From NCBI GenBank assembly GCA_047495785.1, contig JBLDXI010000009.1, forward strand, positions 2,852,001 through 2,916,000: a stretch of 64,000 bases of DNA, read 5' to 3'. The DNA comes from Lepidodermella squamata (taxonomy: Eukaryota; Animalia; Gastrotricha). Under the pieces are notes generated by a model. The model did not search any database. It saw nothing but the letters and a program-made list of their open reading frames with translations, and was not told the DNA's origin. Both the position numbers and the translations under genes were made by a program. Numbering within the stretch: position 1 is the stretch's first letter; every line of letters begins with the position of its first letter. Below are positions 41,273-64,000 of this stretch, in pieces.

Positions 41273-44200
41273 TCATTCGTGCAAAAATTCTGCAATTTCC
41301 ATGTGTCCAGCATTGTGCGCCACAAAGTAGGGTGTCTCACCCAGCCGATCAGGCATATGAGCCGCATTTGGCCATTTCTGGTACAAAAACCTGACCACGC
41401 CAAAATGACCAGCCGCCGCAGCCAGGAACAATGCTGTCTGCTCGTCGTTGTTCAGCACCTGCGGCGCTTCAATCATTTTGTCACACAAATACCGAACAAT
41501 TCCGATGTAACCACGCTGAGCGGCTAACATCATCGGCGATAGACCTTCGTGATCCTGTAATTTCAGGGCCAGGTGATATTTATCGCCTAAATAGGCCAGC
41601 ACGCTCAACTGGTCGTTGATAGCGGCGTGGCTAGCAGCAGATCGACCCTCCAAGTCCCTATGCTTAATACCATCAGGGTGCTCTTCATACAAATATTGAA
41701 CAATAACCAAATGTCCCTTCACAGCCGCGTGAATCAAAGCAGTGAAACCTTGGCTGTCTTGATATTCGATAGAATCGGGATAGGCTCGATGTAGAAATTG
41801 CGTGATTTCGAGATTGCCAAGACTTGCGGCCAGCATTAACGGCGACATTCCACTTTCGCTTCGAAGATGCAGCGAACCGGGCGATTGTTCAACAATAAAT
41901 TCCGCAATATTAAGATGGCCATTTTCAACCGCATGCATCAACGCTGTATAGCCGTCCTTATCTTGCCGCGACAGCGCGTCTTGATATTTGTTATACAAAT
42001 TGTGAACCATTGGCAAATGTCCGTTAATCACCGCGATCATAAGAGCCTGCCGGCCTTTGCCGTTTGACAATTTCACGACCTCCGGGCTTTTTTCGTGCAA
42101 AAAATCGACGACTTCAAAGTGGCCATTCTGCGCGGCTAGCATCAGCGCGGTGCAGCCCTGGAAATTTCGCATTGAAATCGACTCTGGGTACTTTGACCAT
42201 AGGTAACTGACTACGGCAAGGTGGCCACAACCAGCTGCGACCATCAACGGCGTTTCGTTGTTATCATTCGTCATTTCGACAGCTTCCGCGTATCGGCTGA
42301 ATAGAAACTGAACGCATTCCAAGTTGCCGTTAGCAGCCGCGTACATCAGCGCCGTCCATTTATGCTTATCCAGCCGCCGAACCCCGAAAACATCTCGTTC
42401 GCATAGGAACTCAAGCGTGGCCATGTGACCGCCTCGAGCCGCTAGCAATAACGCACTTCGCTCCATTTTATCCAGGGTGTTTAACGAATTCGGGAATTCT
42501 TCGTACAAGAAGTTGATTATGTCGAAATTTCCAGCTTGTGAAGCGACCATTAAGGCGGACATTCCGTCACGGTCTGTTGCCTCGATGGCTTCTGGGCACT
42601 TGCTGTGTAGGAATTGAACAATTTCAAGGTGGCCAAATGCTGCGGCTTGCATTAGTGCGTTTCTTTGGTCGATACTTGTTTTGCGAATGGCGGCTTCGTC
42701 ACGGTTTTGCAGAGTGATTACAACCTGAACGTGACCATTCACGGCCGCATGCATCAGAGCTGTGAAGCCTTGCACGTCTTGCCTAAAAATAAATTAAAAA
42801 AAACTGTCTTTTTTCGAGATAGGAAATGTTTTGAAAATTCCTCCTTAAAGAAAATATTAACTAATTAATAATTAATAATTGCGTTAATAAATTTACGATT
42901 CAATTTTTCGACGAATGGATTTTGAGCTAATAAATTTTCAAAAAATTAACAAAAAAAAATATTTCTAAATTTTTGAAAATAATTTTGCTTACTGATCAAT
43001 GGCAGACGAATCTTTTTCGCAAAGGTATTCCACTGTCTCCAAGTGCCCAGCTATTGCAGCAATCATAAGAGGGGTCCGCTCGGCGCCATCAACCATTTTT
43101 AAACAGTTTAATGAAGCCCCAGCGTTGTATTTGAACAACGCCTGGATTAAATCCAGATGCCCGTAATGCGCGGCGATTGATATCGCCGTTGCGCCATCGG
43201 AACTTTGCTGAAGTAGGGTTTCCCATTTTTTGCGAACAATCGCTTCAACCAGATTCACTCGACCGAGACGAGCCGCTAACATCAGCGCATTTTCTCCACG
43301 GGAGTCCAATCGATCAACTGCGATTTTATCGATTTCGCCCTTAATTATACTCTCCAAGACTGGGTTCAATTCTGAAGAAGAATGAGCACTTTTCCTCGCC
43401 AACATAAAATCGCCTCGTAATTTAGAAACTCGGCAAATCAAACGCAGCCGAGCGTTGTAGTATGCCGGCTCATATTCCTCGTCGAATAGATCGCCGAAAA
43501 GGCAGCGTTGTTCAGCGTCAACCTTTCGAAAAACATCCGCGAAATCAACCTTATTCGCAATCGATCTCTGGAGGAATCGATCGATTAACAAATAAGACTT
43601 GTTGACAGCACATCGCGACAAGTCGGCGACTAAATTCGCAATATTCGCCTCGTCTTCTTCCCATTTTGTTAGGTAGAGATGATGGAGAAAATTACGCCCT
43701 GGAACCCGGATTTTCGCAGATTTCTGGCCGCAAATCACGCAAAGGTCGTGCGGGCTAACTTTGCTGAAAACTTTGGATAAAAAGTCGAAATTTTGTTGAA
43801 TGATCGACTCGCAAATGATATTTATCGTCGGCGTTACGCTGCTATTGCTTCGATTCCGACTCGTGACATCGCTCATATCGGAAATTTTCGCCGACCCTGT
43901 GACTAGTCGCAATCGTATAGCCGAGATATCACTGGTTTTCAGAGCCCTTTTCGCGAATTGAACCGCAACGTCGTGAATCAGGCCATGCATCAAATAGCGA
44001 TCGTCCGAATCCCCAGCGTCCTTATCTATCGGTACTAGCAACGCCTTTTTCGCGAATAAATGGCATAAGGCTCGAGCTTTGAGGACGAAACTTCCCTTGA
44101 ATTGGTCACCCTCGAATCCCCACAGAAACGCAGCTTCTTCCGCGTGGATCGGCTCGTTAGGTTCAAAGAACAAAAACGCGTTAAATCCAACCCGTTGGCT

Positions 44201-45807
44201 GACGTCCATTTGCGCTAAACTCGCCTCGAAAAGGGTCTTGATGTACTTGACAATCCGCTCCTGGGGCCTGTCAGAACTACTTCCGGGTAACGCTTCGTTT
44301 GAAATAGTCATGAAAAGAGTGTCCCAGTCGTCGTGGTCGGCGAAACGCGCCGCAATTAGCGTGGCTATAAACGGCGATCCGAAACATCTCGCAGCTAATT
44401 TCGCCAGTTTTTGCTTCGGTAATCGATCACCGAAATGTAACGTCTTTTCAAACATTTCTACCAGCTGATCATCGGTTAGTGGATGGACGGGCTCTTTTTT
44501 GAAAATGCTGCCTGGGAAAGTTTGGAAAATTGAGGCGTCACGCGTCGTTACGCAAATTGGCAAAAGGTTCGTTTGAATTCGAACGAAATTCAATAATTTC
44601 GCGTTTGTCAAATCGTCCAATATTAGTATCGGCCGTCGACGTTGGGCTTGAAAGTAGGCTAAAGTCTCGGCGATTCCGAGAAAACTCGGCACTAATGGGT
44701 CCGCTCGTTTCGCTTTTTCAATAAATCTCGATATGAACGATTTCTGAACTGAAGGAAGGTTGAAATTTGAACAATCGCCTTCATCGCGCCATTCGTAGCA
44801 ATTTATCCATATTGCGAAGTGGATGTTGCATTCTAGCATTAGCGATTCGCTGTTAGCGCGGTTTGTGAAGATTCTTGCGACCATAGTAGTTTTACCGATA
44901 CCAGCCTCTCCGGTCACGATTAACGCGCCCAATTCAGGGTGACCACAAAGGTTTCGAATAAGGCTCAGCAGGCGCAATTCATCTTCAAGGCGGGTGAAAT
45001 ATTTCGTGAATATCGGTGTGTCAACAGCTCGAAATCTTAAGAGGAAACATCTCAGGAATTTTATAAAAAAAATTTAGAAAATTAACCCAAATTTATTTCG
45101 ATCTTTTCGCCGCCTCGAACCTTCAACTTCGTCCGAAACTTCCGTCCCAGTCGTAGGATCAGGGACATGTGCCTTCAGCAGGGCGATCAACTCGCCGTAG
45201 AACTGATCGAATTGACGTTTTTTATCGAAATTAATGAAAGGACCAAGGGTGTCGTCAAATTGTGCGCCCATCACAGGCCAATCGATTGCAGGTGGTCGTT
45301 TTTCCATGGTTGCTACTATCAGGCGGGATTTATGGGCCAGGGCGTACTGAACTTCAAGGCGGCATCGCTCGCTCGTTTCAAACTTTTCATTGAAAAATAC
45401 CAAGACCAAATCAGATAGCTCAATGTCCTAAAATGTAAAAAATTGAAAATTGAAAAAAATTTCGAGATTTTTCTCAAACCTCGCTTTCATTATTTGAATC
45501 TCGATAATCCATCACATAATAGCCTAATTTTGCTAGTAAAATCGCAACCCGAGACACATCGACGGGCCGGTAATGTAAATCATGGCTGAAATAAATTGAC
45601 CCAGCATAACCTGTGTATAAAAATTTAGGAGAAAATATTCTTTGAAAATATTCGATTTTTCTCACCGACTCGGTCGAGCCGTTTTTCAATTTTCGCCAAC
45701 CGTCTCAAAATTTCTTCAAGCGTGACGTAGTGAACCCATTCGCCGTCGTCTGAATCGTCGTCATCAGCATTCTGATTATTATTCGTCCCATTTTCTTCTT
45801 CCTCCAT
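41273..45807 (-). CDS. TIR - NB-ARC (STAND) - ankyrin repeat protein, paralog 1
   Basis: Exons 45807(or 45912)-45666, 45610-45480, 45427-45087, 45035-42993 and 42782-41273 join in frame. TIR motifs IYFSH and LVLVFFNEKFETSERCRLEVQYA. Walker A GEAGIGKTT, Walker B ILILDD, VTTR, CFGSP, MHGLIHD, then a long ankyrin array. Confidence 0.88.
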
Positions 45808-46452
45808 GGTACGCTTCGGGGGTAAAGAGTAAGTGACCCATTTCCGAAAATCAGCAATAGCCCATTTGCTGCCGGAATATGACCCTGATAACCGCCGATC
45901 GCCTCGAGTCATCCCACTAAAAAATTGTGGGCTGATTTACGCGCGAAATAAAACAAAACACAGTGAACAGTATAAAAGAAGAAAACACCGATTGATTTAT
46001 ATCATTTTCGCACCTAATGGCGCCTAAGGCGCGCATTTTTTATTCCATTATTATGTGCGTAAAACGCTCCTAATGAATGTGCACTATATGCGGTGTATAA
46101 AAAAAACTTGCCGGTAAAAACACTCATGTTTAATCAAGAGGTACCAACGCTTAATAATTTAAGTTATTTTGATGGTTCGTTCCGTATTCATTTTTTTGTG
46201 AATTTTTCTTGATTTTTTCTTGATTATTAATTTATTTAAAATTATTTTCGGTGTAATGCACTGCCGTAATAAAAAATGCGAATGAGAACGGAAAAATCGT
46301 AGTAAAATTGCACTTTTATATTGACGTTTAGCCATGTGAGATCAGCTGTCAGCCACCTACATACGCGTGCAAAACCCACCGGCGGGGCTGTGCTACGAAA
46401 TCAGCTAAATCCGTTGGCATCAGCGTAGTTTATTTTATATCGCGTATAAAAT

Positions 46453-46767
46453 ATGAGTCAAATCTGGGTGAAAGCCATGGAATCGGGCCACATTATTACC
46501 ATGCCCGTGCGCGACGATTTTCCAATCAAACCTGCTCAACCTATTCGGCCCCTGTTCGCGACCAGGGACCCGTTGACGATACCACTTCAGCAACAAATCG
46601 AATGTCCCAATTGCGGCATTATCCCTGGTCAACCGGCCGTGGAAGTCGAAGTGAAACGGCAAGGGAATGCCGAGTTTTTCTCCAACTACGCGATTGCGGC
46701 ATGTCTACTGGTTGCTTCATTCATTTTTCTAACATTTCAATTTATAGCCAATGTTATGACTGAATGA
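46453..46767 (+). CDS. Small protein with a C-terminal transmembrane helix, paralog 2
   Basis: RQGNAEFFSNYAIAACLLVASFIFLTFQFIANV; same C-terminal length as 37336-37698; contains one CPNC. Confidence 0.7.
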   Translation: MSQIWVKAMESGHIITMPVRDDFPIKPAQPIRPLFATRDPLTIPLQQQIECPNCGIIPGQPAVEVEVKRQGNAEFFSNYAIAACLLVASFIFLTFQFIANVMTE

Positions 46768-46969
46768 GTCTTGAATCAGCAATAATAAATTAATTTATTT
46801 TCGAGTCTGGCTTTTTCCACTCAAATTAAGTGACCGTAAAAAATAGGTCATTTCCCGCGATAAATTACTTATTCTCATAAATTATTATGTTATCCCTAGT
46901 TTTGATTGCATAGGTGTATCACTTCATTAAAGTTTTCATCGATAAATTAATTAGTTTTCATCAGCTCCT

Positions 46970-48664
46970 TCACGGGATAAGGTTGGCGTTGCGCAGGGCA
47001 GTTTGGCCTTCGTAGTGGGCGCTGACTTCGCTAGCCGACAGGGCGTGCTTGCAGATCAAAACTTCATCGATGAAGCCAGCAAAATCGCCGTAGAACTGGT
47101 CAGTGCCAACGGTGTAAGGGCAGTTGGCGGTGTACAGCCAGCCGTTGTTAGGATTAACGTTTTGAGCAACAAGCCTCTGTTAATTTGGAAAAAATCGATA
47201 TAAATTAATTTTAAATGGCGAAAATATAGCCATAAATTTAGGGCTTTGATTTTGTGATGTCCCATTATTTTCCCAATTTTCTGAAAAATTATTGAAACTT
47301 TCATAAATTCCTAATTTTTAATTAGGGAAGATTTTTTGATAAAAAAATTCGGAAAATTGTTATTTTATATTTATTATAAAATTGGATTGTTTCCCCAAAA
47401 ATTGAACGAAAAATAGAAAAAATTGTTGTAAAAAATTCTTTGCTTACGTTGTTAAGGTAGAGGCTAAGGAAAGTGTCACCAGTGTAAGGATAAGCCGGGG
47501 CCTTGTAGGTCAAGCAAACTTGGTTCCATCCGTTGGTGTTGATGCTTTCGCCACTGCCAATTTGGTTCTCATTGATCGGCCACTGCAGCTTGATGTTGCT
47601 CTGAACCTGGTTCGAGACAGCCGCGATAATCGCAGTGTAGACAGTTCGGTTAACGTTGTTGCTGTTAGACAACAGGCCACCATTAGGGCAGGTACCATTC
47701 GCACAGCTAAATTATTAAAAAAATACTAAATAATTTATAGAAATTATTTTGAAGCTCACCTGAAGAAAAGACAGAAAGAGCCCTGTTCCTTCAGGTCGAA
47801 AGTCTTGGTGCCAGGGATTTCGAGACGACCGCCGTTGCCAGTCGAGAGGGCGCCAGTACCACGAGCCCAGGTGTTGGTAACAACAGCCGCTCCGTTGTAC
47901 AAGAAAGTGGTCAACCGAGTCGATGAGTAGTCAGTCGCGTCGCCGTCGAATGGCAGGTACAACGAGCACTGGTTCTCGCTGGCAGACGACAACACCTCGA
48001 CTGGGGTGTCGCAGCGGCACTGCTCGAGGCTGAAGGTCGAGCCAGGCGCGCATGGCCGGTTCTGGACCTGGTTTTCGTTCTCTTGATCGACAACGCCGTA
48101 TTGGCTCAAGTCGCCGTTGACAATGGTTAGGACATTGCCCCACGAGTCGGTGCAGTGGGTGGCGTTCGAGGTGGGCGGGGCGACCGAGGTTGGGACAGCC
48201 GGGGCGGCGAGCGAGCACTGGTCGACGCAGGTTTCGCTGGTGTCGCACGAGCACGACGATTCGTTGAAGGCAGTGCCTTGCGGGCAGCAGAGCAGCTCGG
48301 TTCCGAACGTGCACCAGACGTATTGGTTGCAGCTGCCTGGAACAGCGGCACAGCCTCGGGTGCTCACGGCGTCATCGGCGCACACGTCCTGGCACGGGGT
48401 CGGGCCCTCGGGCACACAGGCCTGGAACTGCTCGCGGAAGTAGAGACCAGGCGGGCAGTTGCGAATCTGGCCCTCGGCGTAGGTCTCGTTGTAGAAGAAG
48501 CACGAGTAGAACTGGTGGCAATTGGTCGGGTGGGCGTAGTAGTTGCGAGCATTAGCACGGCCGGAACAGGTCAAGCAGAACGCGTTGGCATTCGTATCAA
48601 TATCCTGAGCAAAGGCGGCGCCAAAAATCACGGCAACGATTAGGCTAACGCAGATAACTGCCAT
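46970..48664 (-). CDS. Secreted PIF-like chitin-binding + LamG protein, copy 2
   Basis: Exons 48664-47760, 47706-47448 and 47176-46970, with the same intron positions and phases as copy 1. Confidence 0.88.
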
Positions 48665-49543: not shown

Positions 49544-50014
49544 ATGAACGCTTTAAACGCGACTGATTCCAATGCGAATAATGGAAATGGAACAACCCTC
49601 GTTGTCGTACCTTTGAATTCGGGTTTTTCATCGCATGGCGATTTTCGACACCATCATGGCGTCGGCCCTTACGCCGTTGTCGCGATGAACAACGAACAAT
49701 TGACAACTTTCCTACTCAATCGGGCGAGAAGGCAAGCAATTGTTCTGAGCATCATTTCAACTCTGATCAGCGGAATGATTTTCCTGACCATTCCGGCGCT
49801 GATTTTAAGCTTTCGCCCTATTGATCATCCAGCGGCTCGTAAAAGCTATCGAACAGCCATTTATCTTAGCATTGCAGCTATTTTCCTGGGAATGATCACT
49901 GCCATATTGCTTGTGGTTTTTCTAGTCATCATTCCGTCTCAGCAACAAATGAGTGAAATTATGATGAAAAATTCGGAAGAGGCTAAGAAGATGCAAGCTG
50001 CTATCAATGGATGA
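49544..50014 (+). CDS. Dispanin/CD225 (IFITM-like) membrane protein, copy 1
   Basis: Two hydrophobic segments, AIVLSIISTLISGMIFLTIPALILS and AIYLSIAAIFLGMITAILLVVFLVII, separated by a short loop, matching the CD225-like pattern. Confidence 0.65.
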   Translation: MNALNATDSNANNGNGTTLVVVPLNSGFSSHGDFRHHHGVGPYAVVAMNNEQLTTFLLNRARRQAIVLSIISTLISGMIFLTIPALILSFRPIDHPAARKSYRTAIYLSIAAIFLGMITAILLVVFLVIIPSQQQMSEIMMKNSEEAKKMQAAING

Positions 50015-51802: not shown

Positions 51803-51975
51803 TAAGAAAATTATCTGATAAAAAAAGTCATTAACTTTATCCTGATGGCGAAGTAGCGAAAAAAACAGCTGTACGTGTTTAATTAAAATTCATCGTTTTT
51901 TGCACATTTCGATTTATTGCCAATTTTGCTATTCGATTCTCACCTGCCCTCATTCGTTGAATTGCTGCTGCTGCC

Positions 51976-52395
51976 ATGATTGCAATAAACACGGCTGGTT
52001 TACAGAAGGTTGACGCAGATTCCAACACCAATACAAATGGGAATGGAACAACACTTGTTGTGGTGCCGTTGAATTCAGGTTTATCATTTCAAGGGGAGGT
52101 TCGAAACCACGGCGTCGGCCCTATCGCCGTTGTCGCGATGACCCATGAACAATTGATAACTTTCTTAAATCAGGCGAGAAAGCAAGCCATCGCGTTGAGC
52201 ATCATTTCAACTCTGATCAGTGGAATGATTTTCCTGACAATTCCGGCACTGATTTTAAGCTTTCGCCCTATTGATCATCCAGCGGCTCGTAAAAGCTATC
52301 GAACAGCCATTTTTCTTAGCAGCGCAGCTATTTTTATGGGAACGATCGCAGCTGTGTTGCTCGTGGTTTTTCTAGTCATCATTCCGTTCCAGTAG
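51976..52395 (+). CDS. Dispanin/CD225 (IFITM-like) membrane protein, copy 2, with tail cut short by TAG
   Basis: Near-identical core to copy 1. TAG at 52393-52395 replaces a Gln codon; the homologous frame continues to TGA near 52464, and the 3' flank is shared with copy 1. Confidence 0.65.
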   Translation: MIAINTAGLQKVDADSNTNTNGNGTTLVVVPLNSGLSFQGEVRNHGVGPIAVVAMTHEQLITFLNQARKQAIALSIISTLISGMIFLTIPALILSFRPIDHPAARKSYRTAIFLSSAAIFMGTIAAVLLVVFLVIIPFQ

Positions 52396-53088: not shown

Positions 53089-53586
53089 ATGCTATTTAAG
53101 AAACGGTCTCAAAAATCGGTTGATTTAGCGTCCACCAGAAGAATGCTAGAAATTCGCAAGCGCCTATCCGATAATGCGTCACGTTTCATGACGATTCCGA
53201 TTCATTCCAATAAGACCAATGCTACCCTTGAACAGCGACGAATCCAGTCGATTTGTTTAGCAGTTGTCTGCAGTTTGACTGGAATGTGGTTTCTGACAAT
53301 ACCAGCTCTCATTTTGGCTTGCCGTCCTATCAATCACCCAAAGGCATCGCAGAGCTATGAAATTTCGAATGTTATCAGCCGAATGGCTTGGTTGATTGGG
53401 CTGTTCACGATTGCTGTGGTGGTAAGTATAGTCTGGGAAACAAATTACGAAGCATTCAATCGACGCCAGCGGGAGTATCGTAATTTGGGCCTCAAGAGAC
53501 AGGCGGAATATGTTCAAGATGCCAGCCTGGGACAAGACAGGATTTTACAAAGTCTTTACGGAAATGGTTCAGCCTCTCTTATTTAA
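53089..53586 (+). CDS. Dispanin/CD225-like membrane protein, divergent copy 3
   Basis: GMWFLTIPALILACRPINHPKASQSY matches GMIFLTIPALILSFRPIDHPAARKSY of copies 1 and 2. Confidence 0.65.
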   Translation: MLFKKRSQKSVDLASTRRMLEIRKRLSDNASRFMTIPIHSNKTNATLEQRRIQSICLAVVCSLTGMWFLTIPALILACRPINHPKASQSYEISNVISRMAWLIGLFTIAVVVSIVWETNYEAFNRRQREYRNLGLKRQAEYVQDASLGQDRILQSLYGNGSASLI

Positions 53587-53622
53587 TCCAAAATTACTTC
53601 ATTTGTAAAATAAAACTGTTAA

Positions 53623-56600
53623 TCAAAGTCTTTTCAATTTGAGAATGATTTCCACTGTTTTTGGATCACTATTGTTAGACTTGATAGTTTTCAGGAGCTC
53701 TTCGACTTCTTTGAAGAAACCGGAGACCTTCAATTCGTCACGGTACCGAAGCGAATCAGCCTCCAGAAGCGTGCAAGCTACCCATAAAGCGTACCTCCGG
53801 GCTCCGACAGGGAGATACTCGCTCAGCAAAGTTTTGTAGAATGAAAATGGCCTGAATTGGAAGTTCTTAAGATCCGGCTTGGATTCGAACCACTTTTCAA
53901 TTTGGTCAGTAAGCTCCAAGCCGATTTTCTCTAATAGTGAGAACATTTTATGAGCCTATTGAGTTATAAAAGGCCAACCAAAAGGCCAACCTTTGTCAAT
54001 GTGAGAATCCTGGCCGACGGCGGAGACTAGAGCATTTATGAAGAACTCAGCCGCGATTACAGGGCGGGGGTCATCTCCTAGATCGACGTCTTCTTGTAGT
54101 CTTAGAAGCATTTCTGCAACGAGATCTTGGCTTGCCACGATCTTTTTCAGCATTTCTTCATCTGCTGACAGAGTCAAAACTAGAACAAGAACTAATTGAT
54201 CGATCTTTCTCGCATGACTTCTTGCGGACAGTGAAGGGGTATCTCGGGAGAACTCTCGCAAAGATGTTATTAGCTTCAAGATCAACTGAAAAAGAGGGCA
54301 GTTTCATCTAATGTATCACAGTGCATAGAAGAGCACAAACCTTGAGACCTTCTCGGATCAAAAATTCGTCGACAAAACGCTTTTCTCGCTCGACCAGCAT
54401 TCGAAGCAGCTCCAAGCTGGAATTAAACACAATAAATCTCAAATTGTATTGCAACTGATAAAACTTGCTGTTTTGAAAGGTGTAGATTGCTCACGATATT
54501 CGGGTAAACTTTCTGAACAGTTTCCTTGTCTACTTGTTCCATTACGAACTCGCAAGCCGACGCGAGGGGAGCTAATAGAGCCGACCAGTCTTTCGAAGAA
54601 ACCAAACGGTTTGCGTGGATGCAAAGAGCTACTATCGTATCATTCGAAGCCGGGCTGGATAGAATGGTCTCGAGGGAGTCAAACGTTTGGTTGTAACATA
54701 GAAAACTGATAATTTCTTCATGCCCATTCAACCACGCATAAGTCACCGGGTAATTGCCATTTTTATCCAATTTAGCGATGCAGTCTTTGTTTTGAGAGTA
54801 GAAAAACTGAACTGCTTTCAGCTGCCCGACCTCAGCAGCATGGCTGACCGGCGTCAAACCACGTTGAGACGGAAGCATCAAAGCCTCTGGGTAAGCGTCG
54901 TAAACGATTTGAAGCATATCAACGTCACCGTGGATGGCAGTGGCAGTCAGAACAGTGAAGCCTGTATCATGATCTGCTTCTTTGATATCTTCTGGCACTT
55001 TTTCTATCAAAAACTCCAGAACAGCCGCATGACCGCCTTTCATAGCCAAAGTGAACGCATTGTCACCATAAGCGTCGCGAAAATGGACGGATTCTTCACA
55101 CTTCTCGAACATGAACTTCACAACGTCCATGTAGCCATTGCCTGCTGTGATCATGAAAGCAGCTCGGCCCTTATTCGTCCGATAATACGCGCCGTCGTAA
55201 TATTGGCTAATCAAGTAAGCGACTGTTTCAAGGTGGCCATTTTCAGCGGCATGGGTTAGTGGGACGTACTCATCGTTGTCTGCCCATGTTATTAGCTCTG
55301 AGCTCAGACTGTGCAAGTACTTGCAGGCTTCAAGTCGACCAGCTCTTGCAGCGTGGCTCAATGCAGACATTCCTTTGAAGTCCTTCAAAGTCAGCAGGAA
55401 ACTGTGCCCTTTCGAATATAGATATTCGAGGGCTGGGACGTGGCCACTACTAGCGGCGACCATCAAAGCTGACACACCTTCATTATCGGTCGAGCTCAGC
55501 AAATCTGGGGCGTATTGGTACAGGAAGTCCAGAACTTTCACATGGCCATTCTTCGCTGCGGCCATCATGCAAGTAGTACCATCTTTAGCCACGAAATAAG
55601 CGGATTCCTGGTATTTTTGATACAGAAATTCAACCACTGCTAGGGCTCCTTTTGCGCAAGCTCGCATGATGGGTGTTACTTCATCATTATCTTTGACTTG
55701 GATAGCCTCTGGATTCTTGCGGTAGAGATACTCAACGATATCGGCAAAGCCCCAACCAGCCGCGGCCATCAGCACCGTCTGGCCATCGCCGTCTCGATAA
55801 TGCAGAGCCTCTGGGTGTTGCTCGGACAGAAACTTGACAACATCGATATGGCCGGTCAAAACAGCCGATACTAACATCATGTAGTGATCGTCTTGATCTT
55901 CCTCTTCACTTTGATGGCTCACCATGCCAGTAATATCAGCTTTGTTGTAGAGGTATTGAACAACATCCAGATGTCCTTTCATTACTGCGAAAGACAGACC
56001 AGAGCCTTTTCGATTCTCCGCAGCTGTTATGTCCATCACTGATTTGTCCTTTTCAGACAAAATCTTCACAACAGCTAGGTGGCCATTAAACGCAGCGTAT
56101 TGGAAGGCCGTCATACCGTCTTTAGCTATTGCGTGGATATCGGAGCCTTTTTTGTTCATTAGGAAATTCACGACCTCAGAATGGCCGTTTCTGGCCGCAG
56201 CCATAAGAGCTGTCATGCCCTTCTCATCCGCTAGAGTCACGGCTTCAGGGAAATGGGGGTAAAGATAGGCAACGATTTTAAGATGGCCACCTGAAGCTGC
56301 ATGCATCAGCGGGGTCCATCCTTTCCCATCCCTCAGCTTGAGACTTGCCGGGTATTTTTCGTAGAGAAACTTGACGATATCAAAATGGCCATTCTTCGCG
56401 GCAGACATGATAGGAAAAAGCTCGTCTTTCCTCGTTGATAATTTTGCTGCCTCAGGGTACTTACCATGGAGGTAAGTCACGATATTGTAGTAACCATTAG
56501 CCGCAGCGAACGCAAGGGGTGTCCAGTCATCGTAAGTTCTGAGACTGATAGCAGCAGGATTCATGCTATGAAGAGCTGTTACCATCAACTCATGGCCGTG

Positions 56601-59414
56601 TTGAGCAGCATACGTCAGGGCAGTGAAGCCATTCCGGTCTTGGATGGCTAGTACTGCAGGATTTTCAGCGTAGACAAAGAGGTATTCAACCACGGGTAAA
56701 TGACCACCGCGAGCTGCTTGCATGATAGCCGTGATTCCCGTCGAATACTCTTGAGCGAATGACGTACAAGGTGTCACTCCATACAGCCGTTGCACAATCT
56801 CGACTTGACCATTCGCCGCTGCTAGCATAAATGCCCGCAGTAAACCAGCCGGTTGCATCCTGGAGTAGTCTAAACAATCTTCAAGGAGGTAAACGAAGAC
56901 CTCTGTATGACCGTGCCTAGCAGCTACTTGCAAGGCACTGTAGACCAAGGCGTCCTTATCCAACTCAGCTTCAGTCGCTGGGTCGATTAAAGACGGATTT
57001 GAGAATTGATGTTTCACCTCGTCAATATCCCCATCAACTGTCGCGGTGATCGCTGGATGGTAGCCAAAATTTTCAATCGCCAACTTCTCAGCCTTGCAAT
57101 CAGCGTATTCAGACCGCCATTTCGGCAGCTTTTCTATGATTTTCAGCCGGTCAACACTGAACAGCGAGTCGTTTTCTTGATCGAAGACTTCAATCAAAAA
57201 ACAGCTGTAGTTGCTATCCGGACTTTTAAAGCACTCATCCAGGTCGAAAGTCGAGATCTTATTTAGAATTTTAACGATCAATCGATATGAATGATTGGTG
57301 CTGAGATTGATGTTCCAACGGCACATGATGTTATCGTGCCACTCTGCCAGGTAAAGGAAGTGGAGAAACGTCCTGCCAGCTGTTTTCAGCGACTTCTGGG
57401 CGCAAAGCTCCGCAAGACCCTTCGGATCGGCTTTATCGATAATTTTTTCGAGAAGATTCCGCCGTTTTTGAAGGACAGTTTCGCTGACAAGGGAAATCAG
57501 CGACTCTTGGCTACTTGCGAACAGGAATGAATCTTCCTCCTCAGCAAACGAAGCCCGACAAGATCCGGATGCTATCTTCATCCGCAGCTCTTCAATGCTG
57601 ATCACATCAAAGAACTTCTTCGCGCTCTGTAACGCGATGGCATAGATCATTTCGTGAACTGCGAAGTAGTCTTCATTGGTCATTGAATAGTCTTCCAGTC
57701 GGACGATAACGCTCTTCCGCTCCAGGACGCGGCAAAGCCCCCTTGCCCGTAATACCCCTCGCTTGAAGTTATCGCCTTCATATCCCCACAGGATTGCTAA
57801 GTCTTCGACGCTAACTGGTTCAGCCGGTTCGAACATTAGGAAAGCAAAGTATAGCTGCCGGAAATTTTTCTCCTTAGTTTCTGTTCTTTTGATGTTGAAT
57901 TCGAACAATTCCGCTACCCTTTGGTGTGGATCTCTGCTGAATGGTTCGTTGAGAATGATTTCGCACTCTTGGTCGTAGAGGAAGCGTTCGGTGTCTTCGA
58001 AGCGAGAAGCTATTAAACTTGCGATGATCGGACTACCAAAACAGCACTTAGCCAGGTAAGTCAGTTGCTTTTGAGTCAGTTTGCCTTCTAGGTTGCAAGT
58101 CGTTTCAAACATGCCGATCAGGTCTTGTTCCTTCATTTCCGGGAGAAGAAACGGCTTACGGAATAGCTTGCTTTGAAAGCATTCCCGAGTGATGACGCAA
58201 CATGCTGTATTTTTGCAGTTTTTCTTGAAGTGTTCGACAATTTTTAGGTTTGAAACATTATCGAGGATGAAAAGAACGCCCTTTTTCAGCTTGCGATAGT
58301 GCGCGGCGATGCCTTCGAGTTCGAAAAATTGAATAGTCGAATACATAGGATCGCTAGAAGCGGCACGTCGGCCGAGGGCGAGTAATTTGTCGATGAAGGC
58401 TCGCTGGGCGACTTCGTTGAACGAGCTAGCGTCGCGCCATTCGAGACAATCGAGCCACAAAGCGACGTGCACGCCGCAGTCACGCGTGAAAAAATCGCTC
58501 TGAGACCGGTCTACTAACAGCCGAGCAATTTGAGTCGTTTTACCACTTCCGCTATCGCCTACAACAGCCATAATTCCTAAATAATTATAAAAAAATTAAA
58601 TTAAAATTCTGTCTTAATAATTAAACTTAATAATTAAATTTTTTACAATTCAATTTAATTAAATAAAAATTAAATAAAAAATTACCTTCCTCTGGACACC
58701 GGCAGGTTTCCCGAATTTCCTCTAAAACTCTGTCTTCAACAATTTTCCGCCGATAATATTTTGCCATTGATGGGACATCCATCGCCATGAGCGATTCAAA
58801 TCGAAAGTTTTTCGGAGGAGGCTGCACCAGAAGTTGGTGGATTCTGTCAACGGCATCTTTGACAAAATCTTCGACAGGGTAATTAGGCGGGAAATCTATC
58901 CATAAATGTTCGGCCAGGTGAAAATTGAGCCATCGACCCCACGATGTTTGATCCATATTAACCGCGAGGAAGCGTTTATTTCGCCGTTCAGCGTAAATTA
59001 CCTCGCTGCCACACAAATCGCTTGCTTTAAATTTTTCGTTGAAAAATAACAGGAAAATATCACACTCGTCTACCGGCTGAAATTAAAAAAAACTCAATTA
59101 GTTCAAAGACAATAGCAATATTGATGGCCTACTTTTTGAAAATATTCTTCAATCTGACGCTCCCGTTTCGGGCTTTTGTCGATTAGCACCTCAAAGTCGT
59201 TTTCTCGAAATTTTTCGGCAATTTCGAAAATTTCTTCCTGCCGAAAATTCGTCGTGTAGCTTAGGTACAGCCGAGGCAGAACTTGTAGTTTTTTCTCGAT
59301 ATGGCGGAATCGCTTAACAACCTCTTCCTTAAGCTCATCTGGCATTAAGGACGGTCGTGGCTCTGGGTTGACAATGCCTGTCAGCAAGCCACCTCGCTCA
59401 TCCATGTCCAACAT
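53623..59414 (-). CDS. TIR - NB-ARC (STAND) - ankyrin repeat protein with extra helical C-terminal region, paralog 2
   Basis: Exons 59414-59133, 59076-58686, 58576-54469, 54416-54341, 54285-53991 and 53930-53623. TIR motifs LYLSY, IFLLFFNEKFKASDLCGSEVIYA and WLNFHLAEHLWIDF. Walker A GDSGSGKTT, Walker B LFILDN, VITR, CFGSP, VHEMI, then roughly 20 ankyrin repeats. Confidence 0.88.
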
Positions 59415-59896
59415 TTAATTGCAGGAATAGTGTCGCTTCGCCACTATAATTGTGGTTTTATTGGGTTAATTATATAGGTTAGACCACTGGACCCTGGATT
59501 ACTTCCAAGCGAACAAAAAGGTCAACTACGTCGCTTGATTCTCGACAGTGACAATTATGCCACGAGAGGAGGCAGGTCAAAACGCCGGTGCATTTTGATT
59601 TTTGTGAGACAGGCCATTCCGGTGCGCATGCCATTCATGTCGTATCAAAGGGTCGCATTTTTTTCGTATTTTTATAACCTGGGTTGCTTGGCGAAAATGT
59701 GCGTCAAACTGCGCTTTCTACAGCGCACTATACACGCTAAATAAAATCGCAAAAAAATAGAACAAAAGCCGTCACCTCAGTGAAATTTAAACTTTAATCC
59801 TAATTTCCTTCAATATCATTTGGAATAAAGATATTTAAATATTCATCTCTCTACTAACTCAGCAAAATAGATTTCAAAATAATCACATGAGTCTCT

Positions 59897-61517
59897 TTAT
59901 GCAGGGATCAAGTTGGCAGCCTTCAGAGCATCTTGGCCGTTGTAGTGAGCTTCAACCTCGCTAGCCGTCAAGGCGTGCTTGCAGATGAGGACTTCGTCGA
60001 TGTAGCCGGAGAAATCGCCATAGACCTGGTCAGTGCCGACGGTGAACGGGCAGTTGGCAACGTTCAACCAGCCGTTGTCGGCAATGATGCTTTGAACGGC
60101 GAGGTTCTGAAAATTTAAAATTTAAATTAAATTCATTTTTCCATTTTTCGAACTCACGTTGTTGATGTAGAGATTCAAGGTGCTGTCGCCGTTGTAGGGG
60201 TAGAACGGAGCCTTGTAGGTCAGGCACACCTGGTTCCAGCCGTTGGTGTTGATGCGCTCCGAGCTGCTGAACTGGCGTTCATTGACCGGCCATTGGGTCT
60301 TCAGGTAGCCTTGAACGGTGTTCGAAATCGAGGCCAAAATCGCGGTGTATGAAGTGTGCTCGGCGTTGTTGTTGTTCGACAACAGACCGCCGTTCGGGCA
60401 AGAGCCATTCACACAGCTAAAAAACAAGAAAAAATGAATTTTAAATTTCGATAGATTTTTAATTCATTTAAAAATTAATCAAAAATTTGAAAAATTTGAT
60501 GAAATTTTAAAATTTTAAAATTCAATAATTTCAAATAAACTTCAAATAAATTTTAAATTTCAAATTGAAATAAATTCAATTTCAATCAAAAATTTTAAAT
60601 TTTTCTTCTTACTTGAAAAACACGCAGAAAGAGCCCTCATTTAGCAAGTCCAAATTTTTGCTGCCAGGAATTTCAACACGGCCACCGTTTCCAGTGAAGA
60701 GGGAGCCAGTACCATGCGCCGAGGTAGTGGTAGTCACAGCAGCGTTGCCGTAGAGGAAAGTGTCGAGCTTGGTCGACGAGAGGTCCTTGGCGCTGCCGTC
60801 GAAAGGCAGGTACAGCGAGCATTGGCTCGAGCTGGCAGATGACACCACCTCGACTGGCGTGTCGCAGCGGCATTGCTCGAGGCTGAAGGTCGAGCCAGGG
60901 GCGCACGGGTGCTCGGAGACTTCATTCTCGTTGTTCAGATCAACAGTGGCGTAGAAGTTCGGGTTGTTGGCGACGGCGGTGAGGACGTTACCGAACGAGT
61001 CGGTGCAGTGCGTGGCGTTGAAGGTGACCGGAGCGACAGAGGTCGGCACGGCCGGGGCGGGGATGGAGCACGAGTCCACGCAGGTCTCGCTGGTGTCGCA
61101 CTGGCAGGTCGTGGCGTTGAAGGCAGTTCCAAGCGGGCAGCAGAGAACCTCCGAGCCGAAGCTGCACCAGACGTATTGGTTGCAGCTGTTAGGGATCGGG
61201 GCACAGCCGTTCGCAGTGATGGTGTCATCGGCGCAGACGTCCTTGCACGGGGTCGGGCCCTCGTGGACGCAGGTCTGGAACTTTTCGTTGAAGTAGAGGC
61301 TGGGCGGGCATTGAAGAAGCTGGCCCTCGGCGTAGGTCTCGTTGTGGAAGAAGCACGAATAGAATTTGTGGCAATCAGTCGGGTGGGCGTAGTAGCTGCG
61401 CGAGTTAGCGCGGCCGGAGCAGGTCAAGCAGAACGCGTTCGCATTCGGGTCAATATTCTGGGCTACAACTGCCACAACGAGCAGAGCAACTACAGCGACG
61501 GTAAACTTAACGGCCAT
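59897..61517 (-). CDS. Secreted PIF-like chitin-binding + LamG protein, copy 3
   Basis: Exons 61517-60613, 60416-60158 and 60106-59897; same structure as copies 1 and 2. Confidence 0.88.
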
Positions 61518-61855
61518 GATAGGTGATTTTATCAAAAAAAAGATGATGAATGATTGAAAAATTATCGCCGTATTTATTGGGCGGCGCGACACGCGTTATT
61601 TCCTGGCACGTGTTTATATTTTGATACTGCCGTCCTTTATCAATGAAAAACATGAAAAATAATTGAAAACATTACGTAATGGGGTTAGGTGTTTTTAACC
61701 CGAAACCGACGAGAGTTCAACAACGTGTCCGTATTTACTCTTGATTTGAAAGATTAAAAAAATAAGTAATTCGAAACTATTTTTATTTTCGCTAATCAAT
61801 GCCTTGCATCCGAGTAAATTAATTTCGCATGATTACCAGTCAGTTGATGTATTAA

Positions 61856-64000
61856 TTATTTGTCGAGGAGGAACTCTACGACCTTCGAGTGGCCAGCAAG
61901 AGCGGCCTGAGCCGCGGCAGTGAGGCCGCTTTTATTCACAAGTTTTGTCGCTTCCTTGAAGGCTGGGTAGAGCAACTCGACAATCTCAGCGTGCCCGCGC
62001 TGAGCAGCCAACATCAGAGGAGTCTCACCTGAAAAAATTGAATTTCATAGAATTTATATACCTATAGGAAAATAAAAAATATAAAAAACCCCTAAATTTA
62101 GGGTCCAGTGTTAAATTGGAGGCTCCATCACTAGCTAGTTTGTCGAGTTTCAAATCTTCAATTGAACCCCAATTTTTTAATAGTGAAGGGTTTATAGCCC
62201 TGGCATGTTAAAATTAGCAATTAGAGTGAAACTCAACCAATAAGAAATAGACTTATTAAACAATTAAGCAAACTTTTCCAATGACTTAATTGAAAATTTT
62301 CCCGACTTTTATAGCCACTATTAGGGCGTGAAATTGAAATTTTAATTAATGATAAGCAGCACGTGATATTGCTGGCACGAGCGCTGACTAAAGCTAAAAA
62401 TATCAATTTATAGAGTCTGGATTTGGGGCGCAGGACCTTATAGCGATCCTTTTTTCAAATTTCTTTGAATTAAATTTGCATAGGTCAATCTTGAATTAGT
62501 AAAAAAGAATTTCCAGATTTAAATATAAAATTACCTGGCTCTGATTGAATTTCGGCAGATTCTGGACAATTTTGATAGAGCACTCGAACCATGTACAATT
62601 GTCCAGCCATCGAAGCGCATGCTAATGGCGTCAAACCCGCAACATTTCGCGTCAAAAGCGCCTCGGGACATTTCCTAGCCAAAAACCGCACAATATCCAA
62701 GTGATTACTCGCAGCGGCGGCCATAACCGGGGTCTGGCCATGTTTCGCCTCTCGCCACTTTGCAACGTCAGGCAGTTTCTCGGTCAAAAATCGCGTCAAC
62801 AGGTGGTCACCCATCGCGGCGGCACACATCAAAGACGTGAAATCTTGCCGATTAGTCTGAGCCGCCGCGTCATGGCATTTCGCCATCAAAAAGCGCACCG
62901 CATCGAGATGACCGGCTTTAGTCGCGATGTGAAGCGGCAGCTCGCCGTCAACATCTTCCTTCCTCGCCGCCTCCGGGTGCACATCGTAAACCCACTCAAC
63001 CGAATCGATGTTACCGTGGAGAGCCGCGAACGACAAAGCTGTCGCTTCGTTCTTATCAAGCGCCTTAACTAAAGTGCCTCGAACATTCCGCTCGTGAATA
63101 AATCTGGCAATATCAGTCTGGCCGATCATTAACGCGAGTTGGATCAGATTCCGCCCGTTCGAATCGACTATTTCATGCAGATCCAAACCGTGGGGGATGA
63201 AATGCTCAAACAAATACCGAACAGCCTCGACATGGCCGTTTTGAACAGTTCGAAGTAGAATTAAGGCGGAGAAGTCTCGGTTGAATTTAACATGTTTCTC
63301 CTCCAGGAAATAACTTGCTATTTCCAGCCGATTTTGGGCAATTGCATGCATTTGAGGCGTGAAGTTGCTATCGTCCTCCAGTTCCATCAAATCAGCGTAC
63401 TTTTCCGAGAGAAATTTGGCAACTTCCAAATGGCCATTTCGACTCGCGTAAGATAACGGGTTCATGTTGTTAAGCGGCTTGTTGCTCGGCGGTTTTTCAG
63501 CTTTGATTTCAGCTAGCAGTTGAACAGCGTTAAGGTGGCCGCATCTCGCCGCACAGGTCAATGTCATTTCGTTGAAATTAGGCCGATTTGCATATTCAGC
63601 CTCAATCGTGTCTAAATCACCGCGCGCACATGCGATAATTAACGGGTCACTTATCGCGGGGTCGAGGGTCAGCGCGAGCCATTTCATTTCTGTGTATAAT
63701 CACGCCGATACGGATGTAGAGCTGAACTCAGCCTCGGAATATACCGGCTTGATTTCAGATAATTTTCCATTGTTTCAAATAATCGGTAGAAAACAGTTTC
63801 ATGGTCGTGATTTTCCAGTTTTAGCATTTCGACAAATTTCGCTGCGCCCAGGCGTCGGCAAATTAACCAAAGCCAGCTTTGGAGGGTTTCGTTTTCGAAT
63901 GGCAAACTATCAAAGGCGACATGAAGTATCGTCCGGCCATTCAATCGATGAATTTTCGTTCCACATAATTCGATTAAATTCTCGTCATTTATATACGTAA
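61856..64000 (-). pseudogene. Third STAND-ankyrin paralog, 3' part only, frameshifted near 63691 (pseudogene or assembly error)
   Basis: LIELCGTKIHRLNGRTILH matches the post-NB-ARC linker of paralogs 1 and 2 (LAELCAQKSLKTAGRTFLH). Ankyrin exon runs to 62535 and the last exon is 62028-61856. The frame changes at the TGTGT run 63691-63695. Confidence 0.75.

What the first reader, a model, noticed from the sequence alone, without database searches (positions are those of the whole stretch)
41273..64000. Animal TIR - NB-ARC - ankyrin receptor family retaining the TIR catalytic-position glutamate
Seen: splicing joins small ORFs that the track lists separately into two complete genes (41273-45807 and 53623-59414). 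Each has a short coiled coil, a TIR domain, an APAF1/plant-type NB-ARC (Walker A/B, (V/I)TR, GxP, MHD-like) and a long ankyrin array. A third paralog runs off the window. Both TIRs keep S-x2-C-x2-E (Glu codons 45355-45353 and 59004-59002) and share a phase-0 intron position. Known: plant TNLs and SARM1 use oligomerisation to switch on a Glu-dependent TIR NADase, whereas familiar animal NB-ARC proteins (APAF1, CED-4, Dark) use a CARD. Inference: this is an intracellular sensor that assembles a resistosome-like TIR enzyme. Non-canonical NB-ARC architectures are known in some invertebrates, so novelty needs a search.
Basis: partly seen in the sequence, partly recalled or inferred. Interest (0 to 1): 0.9.

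Follow-up and report, generated by a model that had tools for sequence, protein, structure and literature searches.

The report
Animal TIR–NB-ARC–ankyrin receptor gene cluster
Two complete genes and part of a third in this small-intron animal genome encode switch proteins built like plant disease-resistance receptors (a TIR head, an NB-ARC ATPase and a long ankyrin-repeat tail); the build is real and rare, but whether the head is an enzyme is still untested.

Summary
Gene 2 (53623-59414, minus strand) is one 1819-aa reading frame. All five of its introns, including one GC-AG intron, are removed exactly in transcript-like contigs of a public run. Gene 1 is a 1388-aa frame on my splice model. 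That model aligns without breaks to an intron-free relative from a metagenome, and the true start is probably 105 nt upstream, at 45912.

The N-terminal domain is a TIR, shown by Pfam TIR_2 matches and by a confident model of a relative (Z 14.8 to SARM1 TIR). The middle is a true NB-ARC: Pfam scores 40.7 bits, the model matches Apaf-1 best, and the Walker A/B, TTR, GxP and MHD-like motifs all align. About 18-22 diverged ankyrin repeats follow.

The family is very rare: about 20 relatives among 1.84 billion representative proteins, all on unnamed metagenome contigs. It forms its own NB-ARC clade.

The Glu-dependent enzyme reading is plausible but unproven. The Glu is invariant, yet the aromatic residue at Glu-4 and the BB-loop glycine are missing. 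If the TIR is active, I expect ADPR or NAD+ depletion rather than cyclic ADPR.

TIR-NB-ARC proteins in animals have been known since 2007 (amphioxus). This scan had already noted the same family elsewhere in this genome. I class it as a new variant of a known kind.

The parts
41273..45912 (-). Gene 1, TIR-NB-ARC-ankyrin. It is 1388 aa counted from the ATG at 45807, and probably 1423 aa counted from the ATG at 45912. Exons: 45912/45807-45666, 45610-45480, 45427-45087, 45035-42993, 42782-41273.
   Evidence: Spliced frame has no internal stop. It aligns collinearly to the intron-free relative P0002. Pfam matches.
45167..45610 (-). Gene 1 TIR domain, split by a phase-0 intron at 45479-45428.
   Evidence: TIR_2 scores 21.8 bits on the second exon alone. 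34% identity to the TIR of P0002, which passes the Pfam threshold and folds as a TIR.
45353..45355 (-). Gene 1 Glu codon at the TIR catalytic position, in helix alpha-C (S-x2-C-x2-E).
   Evidence: Read directly. The column is invariant in all 7 family members that show this region.
43415..45034 (-). Gene 1 NB-ARC module: nucleotide-binding domain, helical domain, winged helix and a second helical domain.
   Evidence: Pfam NB-ARC 40.7 bits. AF2 model with pLDDT 86. Foldseek best match is Apaf-1 at 1.4e-12, followed by NRC2, CED-4 and Dark. Motifs align.
41276..43285 (-). Gene 1 ankyrin array, about 18 repeats, interrupted by the intron at 42992-42783.
   Evidence: Ank_2 at 1.4e-85 and 2.6e-22. 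Repeat cores counted. No DNA-level tandem repeat.
53623..59414 (-). Gene 2, TIR-NB-ARC-ankyrin plus a helical tail, 1819 aa. Exons: 59414-59133, 59076-58686, 58576-54469, 54416-54341, 54285-53991, 53930-53623.
   Evidence: All five introns are removed in contigs of run X1. Single frame. Of the 40 listed differences from those contigs, 30 are synonymous.
58840..59279 (-). Gene 2 TIR domain, split by a phase-0 intron at 59132-59077.
   Evidence: TIR_2 scores 21.7 bits on the second exon alone. Aligned with gene 1 and P0002.
59002..59004 (-). Gene 2 Glu codon at the TIR catalytic position.
   Evidence: Read directly. Invariant column.
56955..58576 (-). Gene 2 NB-ARC-type module. It is below the Pfam NB-ARC threshold.
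   Evidence: 31% identity to gene 1's module, E 4e-83. Walker A, Walker B, ITR, GSP and VHE motifs align with plant and APAF NB-ARC.
54701..56939 (-). Gene 2 ankyrin array, about 22 repeats.
   Evidence: Ank_2 at 3e-109.
53626..54700 (-). Gene 2 C-terminal helical tail across exons 3-6. No confident family match.
   Evidence: Junctions confirmed. Only a weak ZER1-like match, E 0.0024. The relative P0001 has a similar tail.
54417..54468 (-). GC-AG intron of gene 2.
   Evidence: Joint 54416/54469 with ends CT..GC on the plus strand; sequence.
61859..64000 (-). Gene 3, a partial paralog. The pre-ankyrin linker and the ankyrin exons are visible; the 5' part lies beyond the window.
   Evidence: Ank_2 at 3e-46. 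Collinear linker-motif match to gene 2 with E 0.004 and to gene 1 with E 0.13. A further ankyrin exon at 62044-61859.

Best explanation
These are intact genes for cytosolic STAND (NLR-like) switch proteins, and at least gene 2 is transcribed. The domain order is a short conserved helix, a TIR domain, an NB-ARC ATPase module of the Apaf-1/plant-R type, and a long array of diverged ankyrin repeats. Gene 2 adds a helical tail.

Shown here: the gene structures, the three domains, the conserved nucleotide-binding motifs, an invariant Glu at the TIR catalytic position, purifying selection on gene 2, and a separate, very rare NB-ARC clade.

Inferred by analogy with Apaf-1, plant TNLs and bacterial TIR-STAND proteins: the ankyrin array holds the ADP-bound protein closed and binds a ligand. 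Binding allows nucleotide exchange and ring assembly. Assembly brings the N-terminal TIRs into contact.

The most likely output is Glu-dependent cleavage of NAD+. Because no aromatic residue sits four positions before the Glu, I expect plain ADPR and NAD+ depletion rather than a cyclic ADPR isomer. The likely biological role is cell-autonomous defence or regulated cell death.
For: Gene structure and selection:
- Splice junctions confirmed, with the TIR exon joined to the P-loop exon.
- Single frames of 1819 and 1388 aa.
- 30 synonymous against 10 non-synonymous differences from a close relative's transcripts.

TIR:
- Pfam TIR_2 scores 21.7-23.2 bits on half-domains in three homologues.
- Relative P0002 carries a full TIR_2 at 29.9 bits (threshold 28) together with NB-ARC.
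- Its AF2 model has pLDDT 83.7.
- VIA-align gives Z 14.8 and rmsd 2.5 A over 115 residues to SARM1 TIR, and Z 14.3-14.6 to the plant TIRs RPV1, RPS4 and RUN1 and to SPARTA (Foldseek).
- Cys and Glu of S-x2-C-x2-E are invariant in 7 of 7 members that are only 17-47% identical.

NB-ARC:
- Pfam 40.7 bits.
- AF2 model with pLDDT 86 and pTM 0.86.
- Best structural matches are ADP-bound Apaf-1, NRC2, CED-4, Dark, ZAR1 and ROQ1.
- The motif columns align with plant and APAF proteins.

Background from papers: the Glu is required for NAD+ cleavage in every TIR enzyme tested.
Against: - No activity, oligomer or infection response has been measured.
- The Glu-4 position, equivalent to AbTir W204 and SARM1 W638, is R in gene 1 and L in gene 2, and it is never aromatic in the family.
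- No glycine is visible in the beta-B/alpha-B loop, where AbTir G174A is inactive.
- The TIR fold matches scaffold TIRs almost as well (IL-1RAcPb Z 14.1, MyD88 Z 13.6).
- The TIR structure was modelled on a relative, not on the window's own spliced protein.
- Gene 2's ATPase module misses the Pfam NB-ARC threshold.
- I did not test whether gene 1 is transcribed.
Confidence: 0.55

Rival explanations
1. The switch is the same, but the TIR is a scaffold and not an enzyme. Oligomerisation builds a TIR platform that recruits another TIR protein, such as a SARM/TIR-1-like or MyD88-like adaptor, or a kinase cascade. The conserved Glu then serves structure or binding.
For: The model fits the scaffold TIRs IL-1RAcPb, MyD88 and Hydra TRR-2 within 1 Z unit of the enzyme TIRs. 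The family lacks the aromatic residue at Glu-4 and the BB-loop glycine.
Against: Cys and Glu are the only alpha-C residues that stay invariant across very divergent members. According to the 2026 preprint, scaffold-type animal TLR/IL-1R TIRs mostly lack the Glu. The Pfam match is to TIR_2, not to the TLR-type TIR model.
Confidence: 0.2
2. The family has a non-immune role. It could be an Apaf-1-like regulator of developmental or stress-induced cell death, or a component of self/non-self or genetic-conflict systems like the fungal NOD-ankyrin proteins, rather than a pathogen sensor.
For: The closest structural match is Apaf-1. The differences from a close relative are mostly synonymous, so that comparison shows no diversifying selection. 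The ankyrin repeats are not the near-identical, shuffling type.
Against: The genes occur as a multi-copy local cluster, and the scan holds many further notes of the same architecture in this genome. Paralogs are only 29% identical, while the neighbouring chitin-binding genes are 72% identical. The output is a TIR and not a caspase-recruiting domain.
Confidence: 0.15
3. The family descends from a bacterial TIR-NB-ARC defence protein that was acquired by horizontal transfer and then given an ankyrin tail. This concerns origin only and is compatible with any of the mechanisms above.
For: In the ESM Atlas the nearest clusters by language-model features are bacterial TIR_2 and TIR_2-NB-ARC(-TPR) proteins. 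The TIR matches TIR_2, the model that also covers bacterial TIRs.
Against: An exhaustive profile search found no prokaryote-like close relative. Beyond about 20 intron-bearing metagenome relatives, plant, APAF and other NB-ARC proteins all score alike, at E 1e-7 to 1e-3. In the tree the family is its own clade (100/98) and is not nested among the other NB-ARC proteins. One intron position is shared across lineages. The Atlas tool itself warns that such rows are no sign of transfer.
Confidence: 0.1

Closest known systems
Plant TIR-NLRs (TNLs: RPP1, ROQ1, RPS4, RUN1)
   Same: Same order: N-terminal TIR, then NB-ARC with Walker A/B, TTR, GxP and MHD-like motifs, then a C-terminal repeat sensor. 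The alpha-C motif is collinear with the plant S-x-W-C-x-x-E-L motif, including the Ser, Cys and Glu. The structural match to RPV1, RPS4 and RUN1 TIRs is Z 14.2-14.6.
   Different: The sensor is ankyrin repeats, not LRR, and there is no C-JID or post-LRR domain. The Trp at Glu-4 is replaced by R or L. The NB-ARC lies in a separate clade. The host is an animal, so the EDS1-family receivers of the plant TIR signal are not to be assumed here. I did not search for them.
Apaf-1 / CED-4 / Dark (animal NB-ARC apoptosome proteins)
   Same: These are the best structural matches of the ATPase module. Apaf-1 aligns at 1.4e-12 over about 556 columns, which includes the region after the winged helix. Apaf-1 is also the weak best match by sequence in the PDB.
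   Different: The N-terminus is a TIR and not a CARD. The repeats are ankyrin and not WD40. The family is a separate clade from the CARD/WD40 proteins and is multi-copy.
Non-canonical animal NB-ARC proteins, including the amphioxus TIR-NB-ARC (Zmasek et al. 2007, PMC2246300)
   Same: An animal protein with a TIR in place of the CARD, N-terminal to an NB-ARC, already compared with plant R proteins in that paper.
   Different: The C-terminal parts described there are WD40 or TPR repeats, or missing. That paper does not mention ankyrin repeats.
SARM1 / TIR-1
   Same: Best structural match of the TIR (Z 14.8, rmsd 2.5 A over 115 residues). It is an animal TIR with a catalytic Glu whose activity depends on assembly.
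   Different: SARM1 is ARM-SAM-TIR with a C-terminal TIR and no ATPase. It has Trp at Glu-4 and a BB-loop glycine.
Bacterial TIR-STAND proteins (TIR_2-NB-ARC-TPR and similar)
   Same: TIR_2 followed by NB-ARC followed by a repeat array. These are the nearest clusters by language-model features.
   Different: No sequence relative of this kind came closer than the plant or APAF proteins. Their repeats are TPR or WD40. The genes here have introns.
Fungal NOD-ankyrin NLRs (Dyrka et al. 2014, PMC4986451)
   Same: A NOD ATPase with an ankyrin array in place of LRR.
   Different: The fungal examples quoted there are NACHT-ANK, with N-terminal PNP_UDP or sesB-like domains, and often have near-identical repeats. 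Here the NOD is an NB-ARC, the head is a TIR, and the repeats are diverged.

Membership tests
TIR domain superfamily | Flavodoxin-like beta-alpha fold of about 130 residues that TIR profiles recognise | tested here: met
   TIR_2 scores 21.7-23.2 bits on the second half-domain of gene 1, gene 2 and L001. Relative P0002, 34% identical to gene 1 across the domain, scores 29.9 bits against a threshold of 28. Its model gives Z 14.8 to SARM1 TIR. The window's own spliced TIR could not be submitted as one sequence.
Catalytic (NAD+-cleaving) TIRs | Glutamate on helix alpha-C at the catalytic position | tested here: met
   S-x2-C-x2-E is present in both genes. The Glu is invariant in 7 of 7 family members. 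The placement rests on motif collinearity and on the helix predicted at residues 68-79 of the model, not on a residue-level superposition.
Catalytic (NAD+-cleaving) TIRs | Aromatic residue four positions before the Glu (the WxxxE motif), needed for cyclic ADPR products | tested here: not met
   The position is R in gene 1, L in gene 2, L in L001, R in P0002, H in P0007, N in P0010 and L in P0021. Its role is described in the Manik et al. preprint.
Catalytic (NAD+-cleaving) TIRs | Intact BB loop with its conserved glycine | tested here: inconclusive
   There is no Gly between beta-B and alpha-B in gene 1, gene 2, L001 or P0002. The loop alignment to solved TIRs was not made residue by residue.
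Catalytic (NAD+-cleaving) TIRs | Measured NAD+ consumption that is lost in the E-to-A mutant | not testable with these tools
   Needs a biochemical assay.
NB-ARC (AP-ATPase) STAND NTPases | Pfam NB-ARC above threshold, with Walker A, Walker B, RNBS-B (TTR), GLPL and MHD motifs in order | tested here: met
   Gene 1 scores 40.7 bits against 23.5. Its motifs are GIGKTT, LILDD, TTRD, GSPF and MHG. Gene 2 has GSGKTT, FILDN, ITRE, GSPI and VHE. Gene 2 alone is below the Pfam threshold, but it is homologous to gene 1 at E 4e-83.
NB-ARC (AP-ATPase) STAND NTPases | NBD-HD1-WHD fold as in Apaf-1 and plant NLRs | tested here: met
   AF2 model with pLDDT 86. Foldseek matches Apaf-1, NRC2, CED-4, Dark, ZAR1, Sr35, ROQ1 and RPP1 at E 1e-12 to 1e-6.
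NLR in the strict sense (NOD + LRR); plant TNL | C-terminal leucine-rich repeats | tested here: not met
   Only ankyrin families match downstream of the NOD. The proteins are therefore NLR-like in architecture but are neither TNLs nor NLRs in the strict sense.
Apaf-1 / CED-4 family | N-terminal CARD, WD40 sensor, and clustering with the APAF clade | tested here: not met
   There is no CARD or WD40 match. The family is split from the CARD/APAF_C/WD40 proteins with 100/98 support.
Fungal-type NOD-ANK with highly conserved repeats | Near-identical tandem repeats | tested here: not met
   Tandem Repeats Finder reports nothing in either ankyrin array.

The most novel reading that the evidence does not exclude
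This animal lineage runs a private, expanded, resistosome-type immune system. It consists of many TIR-NB-ARC-ankyrin receptors that assemble on sensing a pathogen and fire an enzymatic TIR. The system would have arisen independently of plant TNLs, and it would sit in a group of small-intron invertebrates that earlier readers of this scan took for nematodes, a phylum described as lacking NLRs.
Probability: 0.3. Interest if true: 0.8.

Novelty: new variant of a known kind. Interest (0 to 1): 0.6.

Why it matters
The pairing of a TIR enzyme with an NB-ARC switch is the core of plant TNL immunity and of many bacterial anti-phage systems. In animals it is known only as a scattered curiosity, such as the amphioxus protein.

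Here an animal carries a transcribed, selected, multi-copy family with this pairing and an ankyrin sensor. That gives a tractable case for two questions. Does oligomerisation-gated TIR chemistry operate as an animal receptor output? Was this design invented repeatedly?

The family is also almost invisible to current resources. Its short introns break it into ORFs. Gene 2's ATPase module scores below the Pfam NB-ARC threshold. Only about 20 unnamed metagenome relatives exist. Surveys of animal immune gene sets would therefore miss it.

Tried and rejected
- The word-indexed protein search found only one relative of the NOD (P0001) and only itself for the TIR.
- PDB sequence searches with the TIR profile and with the TIR of P0002 gave nothing at E up to 10. 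The NOD gave only a weak Apaf-1 match, E 0.014.
The two scans that ran, with the TIR motif patterns and with the gene 2 NOD, found no relative.
- I searched 1.8-2.5 kb upstream of five more distant NB-ARC-ankyrin relatives (L003-L007) with a family TIR profile and with Pfam. No TIR or other known N-terminal domain turned up, so the TIR is shown for only part of the wider clade.
- For the gene 1 exon 3/4 junction I considered a phase-1 donor at GAAG|GTTCGA paired with the acceptor TCGAG|. I rejected it for the 51-nt intron 45086-45036, because P0002 and gene 2 keep the residues that the other choice would delete.
- Organism identity stayed unresolved. There is no Rfam match in the window, no nematode SL1 within 3 mismatches, and no usable Atlas hit for a neighbouring gene. 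I cannot confirm 'nematode'.
- The paper searches found no animal TIR-NB-ARC-ankyrin protein.
- The spliced proteins could not be passed to Pfam or to structure prediction as single sequences, so I used exon references and the intron-free relative instead.

Full report
**What is in the sequence.**
On the minus strand between 41.3 and 64 kb, the long ORFs listed fall into three groups. Reading the DNA and translating all three frames showed short introns of 51-210 nt, with GT..AG ends in all but one (a GC..AG intron, below). These introns join the pieces into long frames.

**Gene 2, checked against public reads.**
- Two runs hold this stretch. X2 holds 96% of the sampled words and shows no joints, so it behaves as the source DNA.
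- X1 is labelled with another organism code. Its contigs differ from the window at about 1-5% of positions, and they lack the introns exactly.
- The intervals skipped are 59132-59077, 58685-58577, 54468-54417, 54340-54286 and 53990-53931. All have GT..AG ends on the minus strand except one, which is GC..AG.
- One 482-nt contig joins the second TIR exon to the exon that starts at the P-loop.
- Joining the six exons gives 5460 nt and 1819 aa, with a single terminal stop at 53623.
- Of the 40 differences between X1 and the window that the tool listed, 30 are synonymous in this frame. This includes the three small 3' exons. The whole model is therefore under purifying selection.

**Gene 1, checked by homology.**
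- The reads tool allowed only one call, so I tested gene 1 by homology instead.
- An exhaustive profile search returned P0002, a 501-aa uninterrupted ORF on a metagenome contig.
- The spliced gene 1 N-terminus aligns to P0002 without breaks across three junctions (34% identity over 201 aa, E 4e-36).
- This alignment also decides the ambiguous exon 3/4 junction in favour of the 51-nt intron at 45086-45036.
The in-frame ATG at 45912 is therefore the likelier start.
- Genes 1 and 2 are collinear over their whole length but only 29% identical. They are old paralogs.

**Gene 3.**
Gene 3 shows ankyrin repeats and a further ankyrin exon. It also has a weak but collinear match to the linker motif that precedes the ankyrin array in genes 1 and 2. 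Its 5' half lies outside the window. A note from the neighbouring window (s1-407807) says a TIR is there, which I could not check.

**The TIR domain.**
- Each second TIR exon, taken alone, matches Pfam TIR_2 at 21.7-23.2 bits in gene 1, in gene 2 and in the metagenome relative L001. The matches cover profile positions 48 to about 114 of 122.
- P0002 has the domain in one piece and passes the threshold (29.9 bits against 28). It also carries an NB-ARC.
- I modelled residues 76-215 of P0002 with a family alignment that included the window's exons as rows. The model has pLDDT 83.7 and pTM 0.79, with a beta-alpha-beta topology.
- Foldseek lists SARM1, C. elegans TIR-1, plant RPS4, Hydra TRR-2 and SPARTA TIRs, together with the related CMP N-glycosidases and DNPH1.
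- VIA-align gives Z 14.8 (rmsd 2.5 A over 115 residues) to SARM1 TIR and Z 14.2-14.6 to RPV1, RPS4 and RUN1. IL-1RAcPb (14.1) and MyD88 (13.6) score almost as well.
- So the fold is a TIR, but the fold alone does not separate enzyme from scaffold.

**The catalytic position.**
- In the seven family sequences that cover helix alpha-C, which are only 17-47% identical, the Cys and the Glu of S-x2-C-x2-E are invariant.
- The motif runs collinear with the plant S-x-W-C-x-x-E-L motif. That correspondence is from my own knowledge. It agrees with the helix at model residues 68-79.

**Why the Glu alone does not show enzyme activity.**
- A 2026 preprint reports that most animal TIRs outside the TLR and IL-1R clades keep this Glu, and that several animal TIRs, including human TLR4, make cADPR.
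- Manik et al. found an aromatic residue four positions before the Glu in every TIR that makes a cyclic ADPR product. They also found that BB-loop Gly and Ser mutants of AbTir are inactive.
- In this family the Glu-4 position is R, L, L, R, H, N or L. I see no glycine in the loop after beta-B.
- My reading is that catalysis is plausible. If it occurs, the product should be ADPR with NAD+ depletion, not a cyclic isomer.

**The NB-ARC module.**
- Gene 1 scores 40.7 bits on Pfam NB-ARC, against a threshold of 23.5.
- Gene 2 does not reach the threshold, but its module is 31% identical to gene 1's over 514 aa (E 4e-83).
- In an alignment with relatives, plant CNLs and APAF-like proteins, the Walker A, Walker B, TTR, GxP and MHD-like motifs line up.
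- The AF2 model of gene 1's 540-aa module has pLDDT 86 and pTM 0.86. Its best matches are ADP-bound Apaf-1 (1.4e-12, about 556 aligned columns), then NRC2, CED-4, Dark, ZAR1, Sr35, ROQ1 and RPP1.

**The ankyrin arrays.**
The ankyrin matches are very strong. The arrays hold about 18 and about 22 repeats. They show no DNA-level tandem repetition.

**How common the family is.**
- The profile search of 1.84 billion representative proteins gave 55 matches at E up to 1e-3.
- The first 20 or so are NB-ARC or NB-ARC-ankyrin fragments. Every one I looked up sits on an unnamed ENA metagenome contig.
- These contigs carry animal-type neighbouring genes such as Cys-loop channels, CBM_14 and sushi domains. 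L001 has an intron at the same TIR position as the window's genes.
- Beyond them come plant CNLs, CARD-NB-ARC-WD40 APAF proteins and assorted NB-ARC proteins, at E 1e-7 to 1e-3.
- A maximum-likelihood tree of 43 NB-ARC cores puts the family on one side of a branch with 100/98 support, apart from the plant and APAF clades. Genes 1 and 2 are sisters in it (97/84). The outgroups in this tree were simply the best-scoring matches to the family profile, so it is not a balanced sample.
- A TIR is demonstrable only in the subgroup that contains the window's genes, P0001/L001, P0002, P0007, P0010 and P0021. I found none upstream of five more distant members.

**What is already known.**
- Zmasek et al. 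(2007) described expanded NB-ARC families in amphioxus, sea urchin and Nematostella, with DD, DED or TIR in place of the CARD and TPR in place of WD40. They already compared the amphioxus TIR-NB-ARC with plant R genes.
- Placozoans have 39 NB-ARC genes, with WD40 or TPR repeats. Cnidarians have TIR-NACHT proteins.
- Fungi have NOD-ankyrin NLRs. The same paper states that nematodes and arthropods appear to lack NLRs.
- In five targeted searches I found no paper describing an animal TIR-NB-ARC-ankyrin protein.
- Within this scan the same architecture was noted 23 times in this genome. One copy was followed up with a similar conclusion (s1-384320).

**Origin.**
The ESM Atlas places P0002 nearest to bacterial TIR_2 and TIR_2-NB-ARC-TPR clusters. 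This is a lead towards horizontal transfer. The exhaustive sequence search and the tree give it no support.

**Organism.**
I could not name the organism.

**Verdict.**
A TIR-output STAND switch is well founded, but the enzymatic resistosome is a reasonable, unproven hypothesis with two sequence features against the canonical cyclase chemistry. This is a new variant of a known kind.

Noticed in passing
window 54417-54468 (minus strand): Gene 2 has a GC-AG intron of 52 nt. Transcript-like contigs confirm it, so non-canonical donors are used in this genome.
   Followed up: yes
window 47756-48664 and 60609-61592 (minus strand): Two secreted genes with a CBM_14 (peritrophin-A chitin-binding) domain alternate with the receptor genes. 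They are 72% identical, whereas the flanking receptor paralogs are only 29% identical. Either the duplications differ in age or the receptors evolve much faster.
   Followed up: partly
window 49544-50014, 51976-52395 and 53089-53586 (plus strand): Three tandem small ORFs share a nearly identical hydrophobic stretch. They look like a local family of small membrane proteins between genes 1 and 2.
   Followed up: no
window 27264-30347 (plus strand): ORFs with hydrophobic N-termini that look like signal peptides. Pfam confirmed ankyrin repeats in the first of them (27264-28115). The later ones have ankyrin-like sequence and Cys-rich tails, which I did not test. They look like secreted ankyrin proteins and are unrelated to the NB-ARC genes.
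   Followed up: no
window 13327-15624 and 22794-25000: Class C GPCR-type pieces (ANF_receptor ligand-binding region and 7tm_3) lie on both strands.
   Followed up: no
window 53977 and 54052-54371: The DNA run X2 carries a second haplotype at about 40% depth. It has an 8-nt deletion inside intron 5 and a run of substitutions that X1 shares. The sequenced material is therefore heterozygous or mixed at this locus.
   Followed up: no
L004 3306-3890 (plus strand), just upstream of the NB-ARC-ankyrin ORF P0063: A 195-aa ORF with no Pfam match, helical-looking by eye (not predicted), sits where the TIR would be. The wider NB-ARC-ankyrin clade may use other, unrecognised N-terminal domains.
   Followed up: partly
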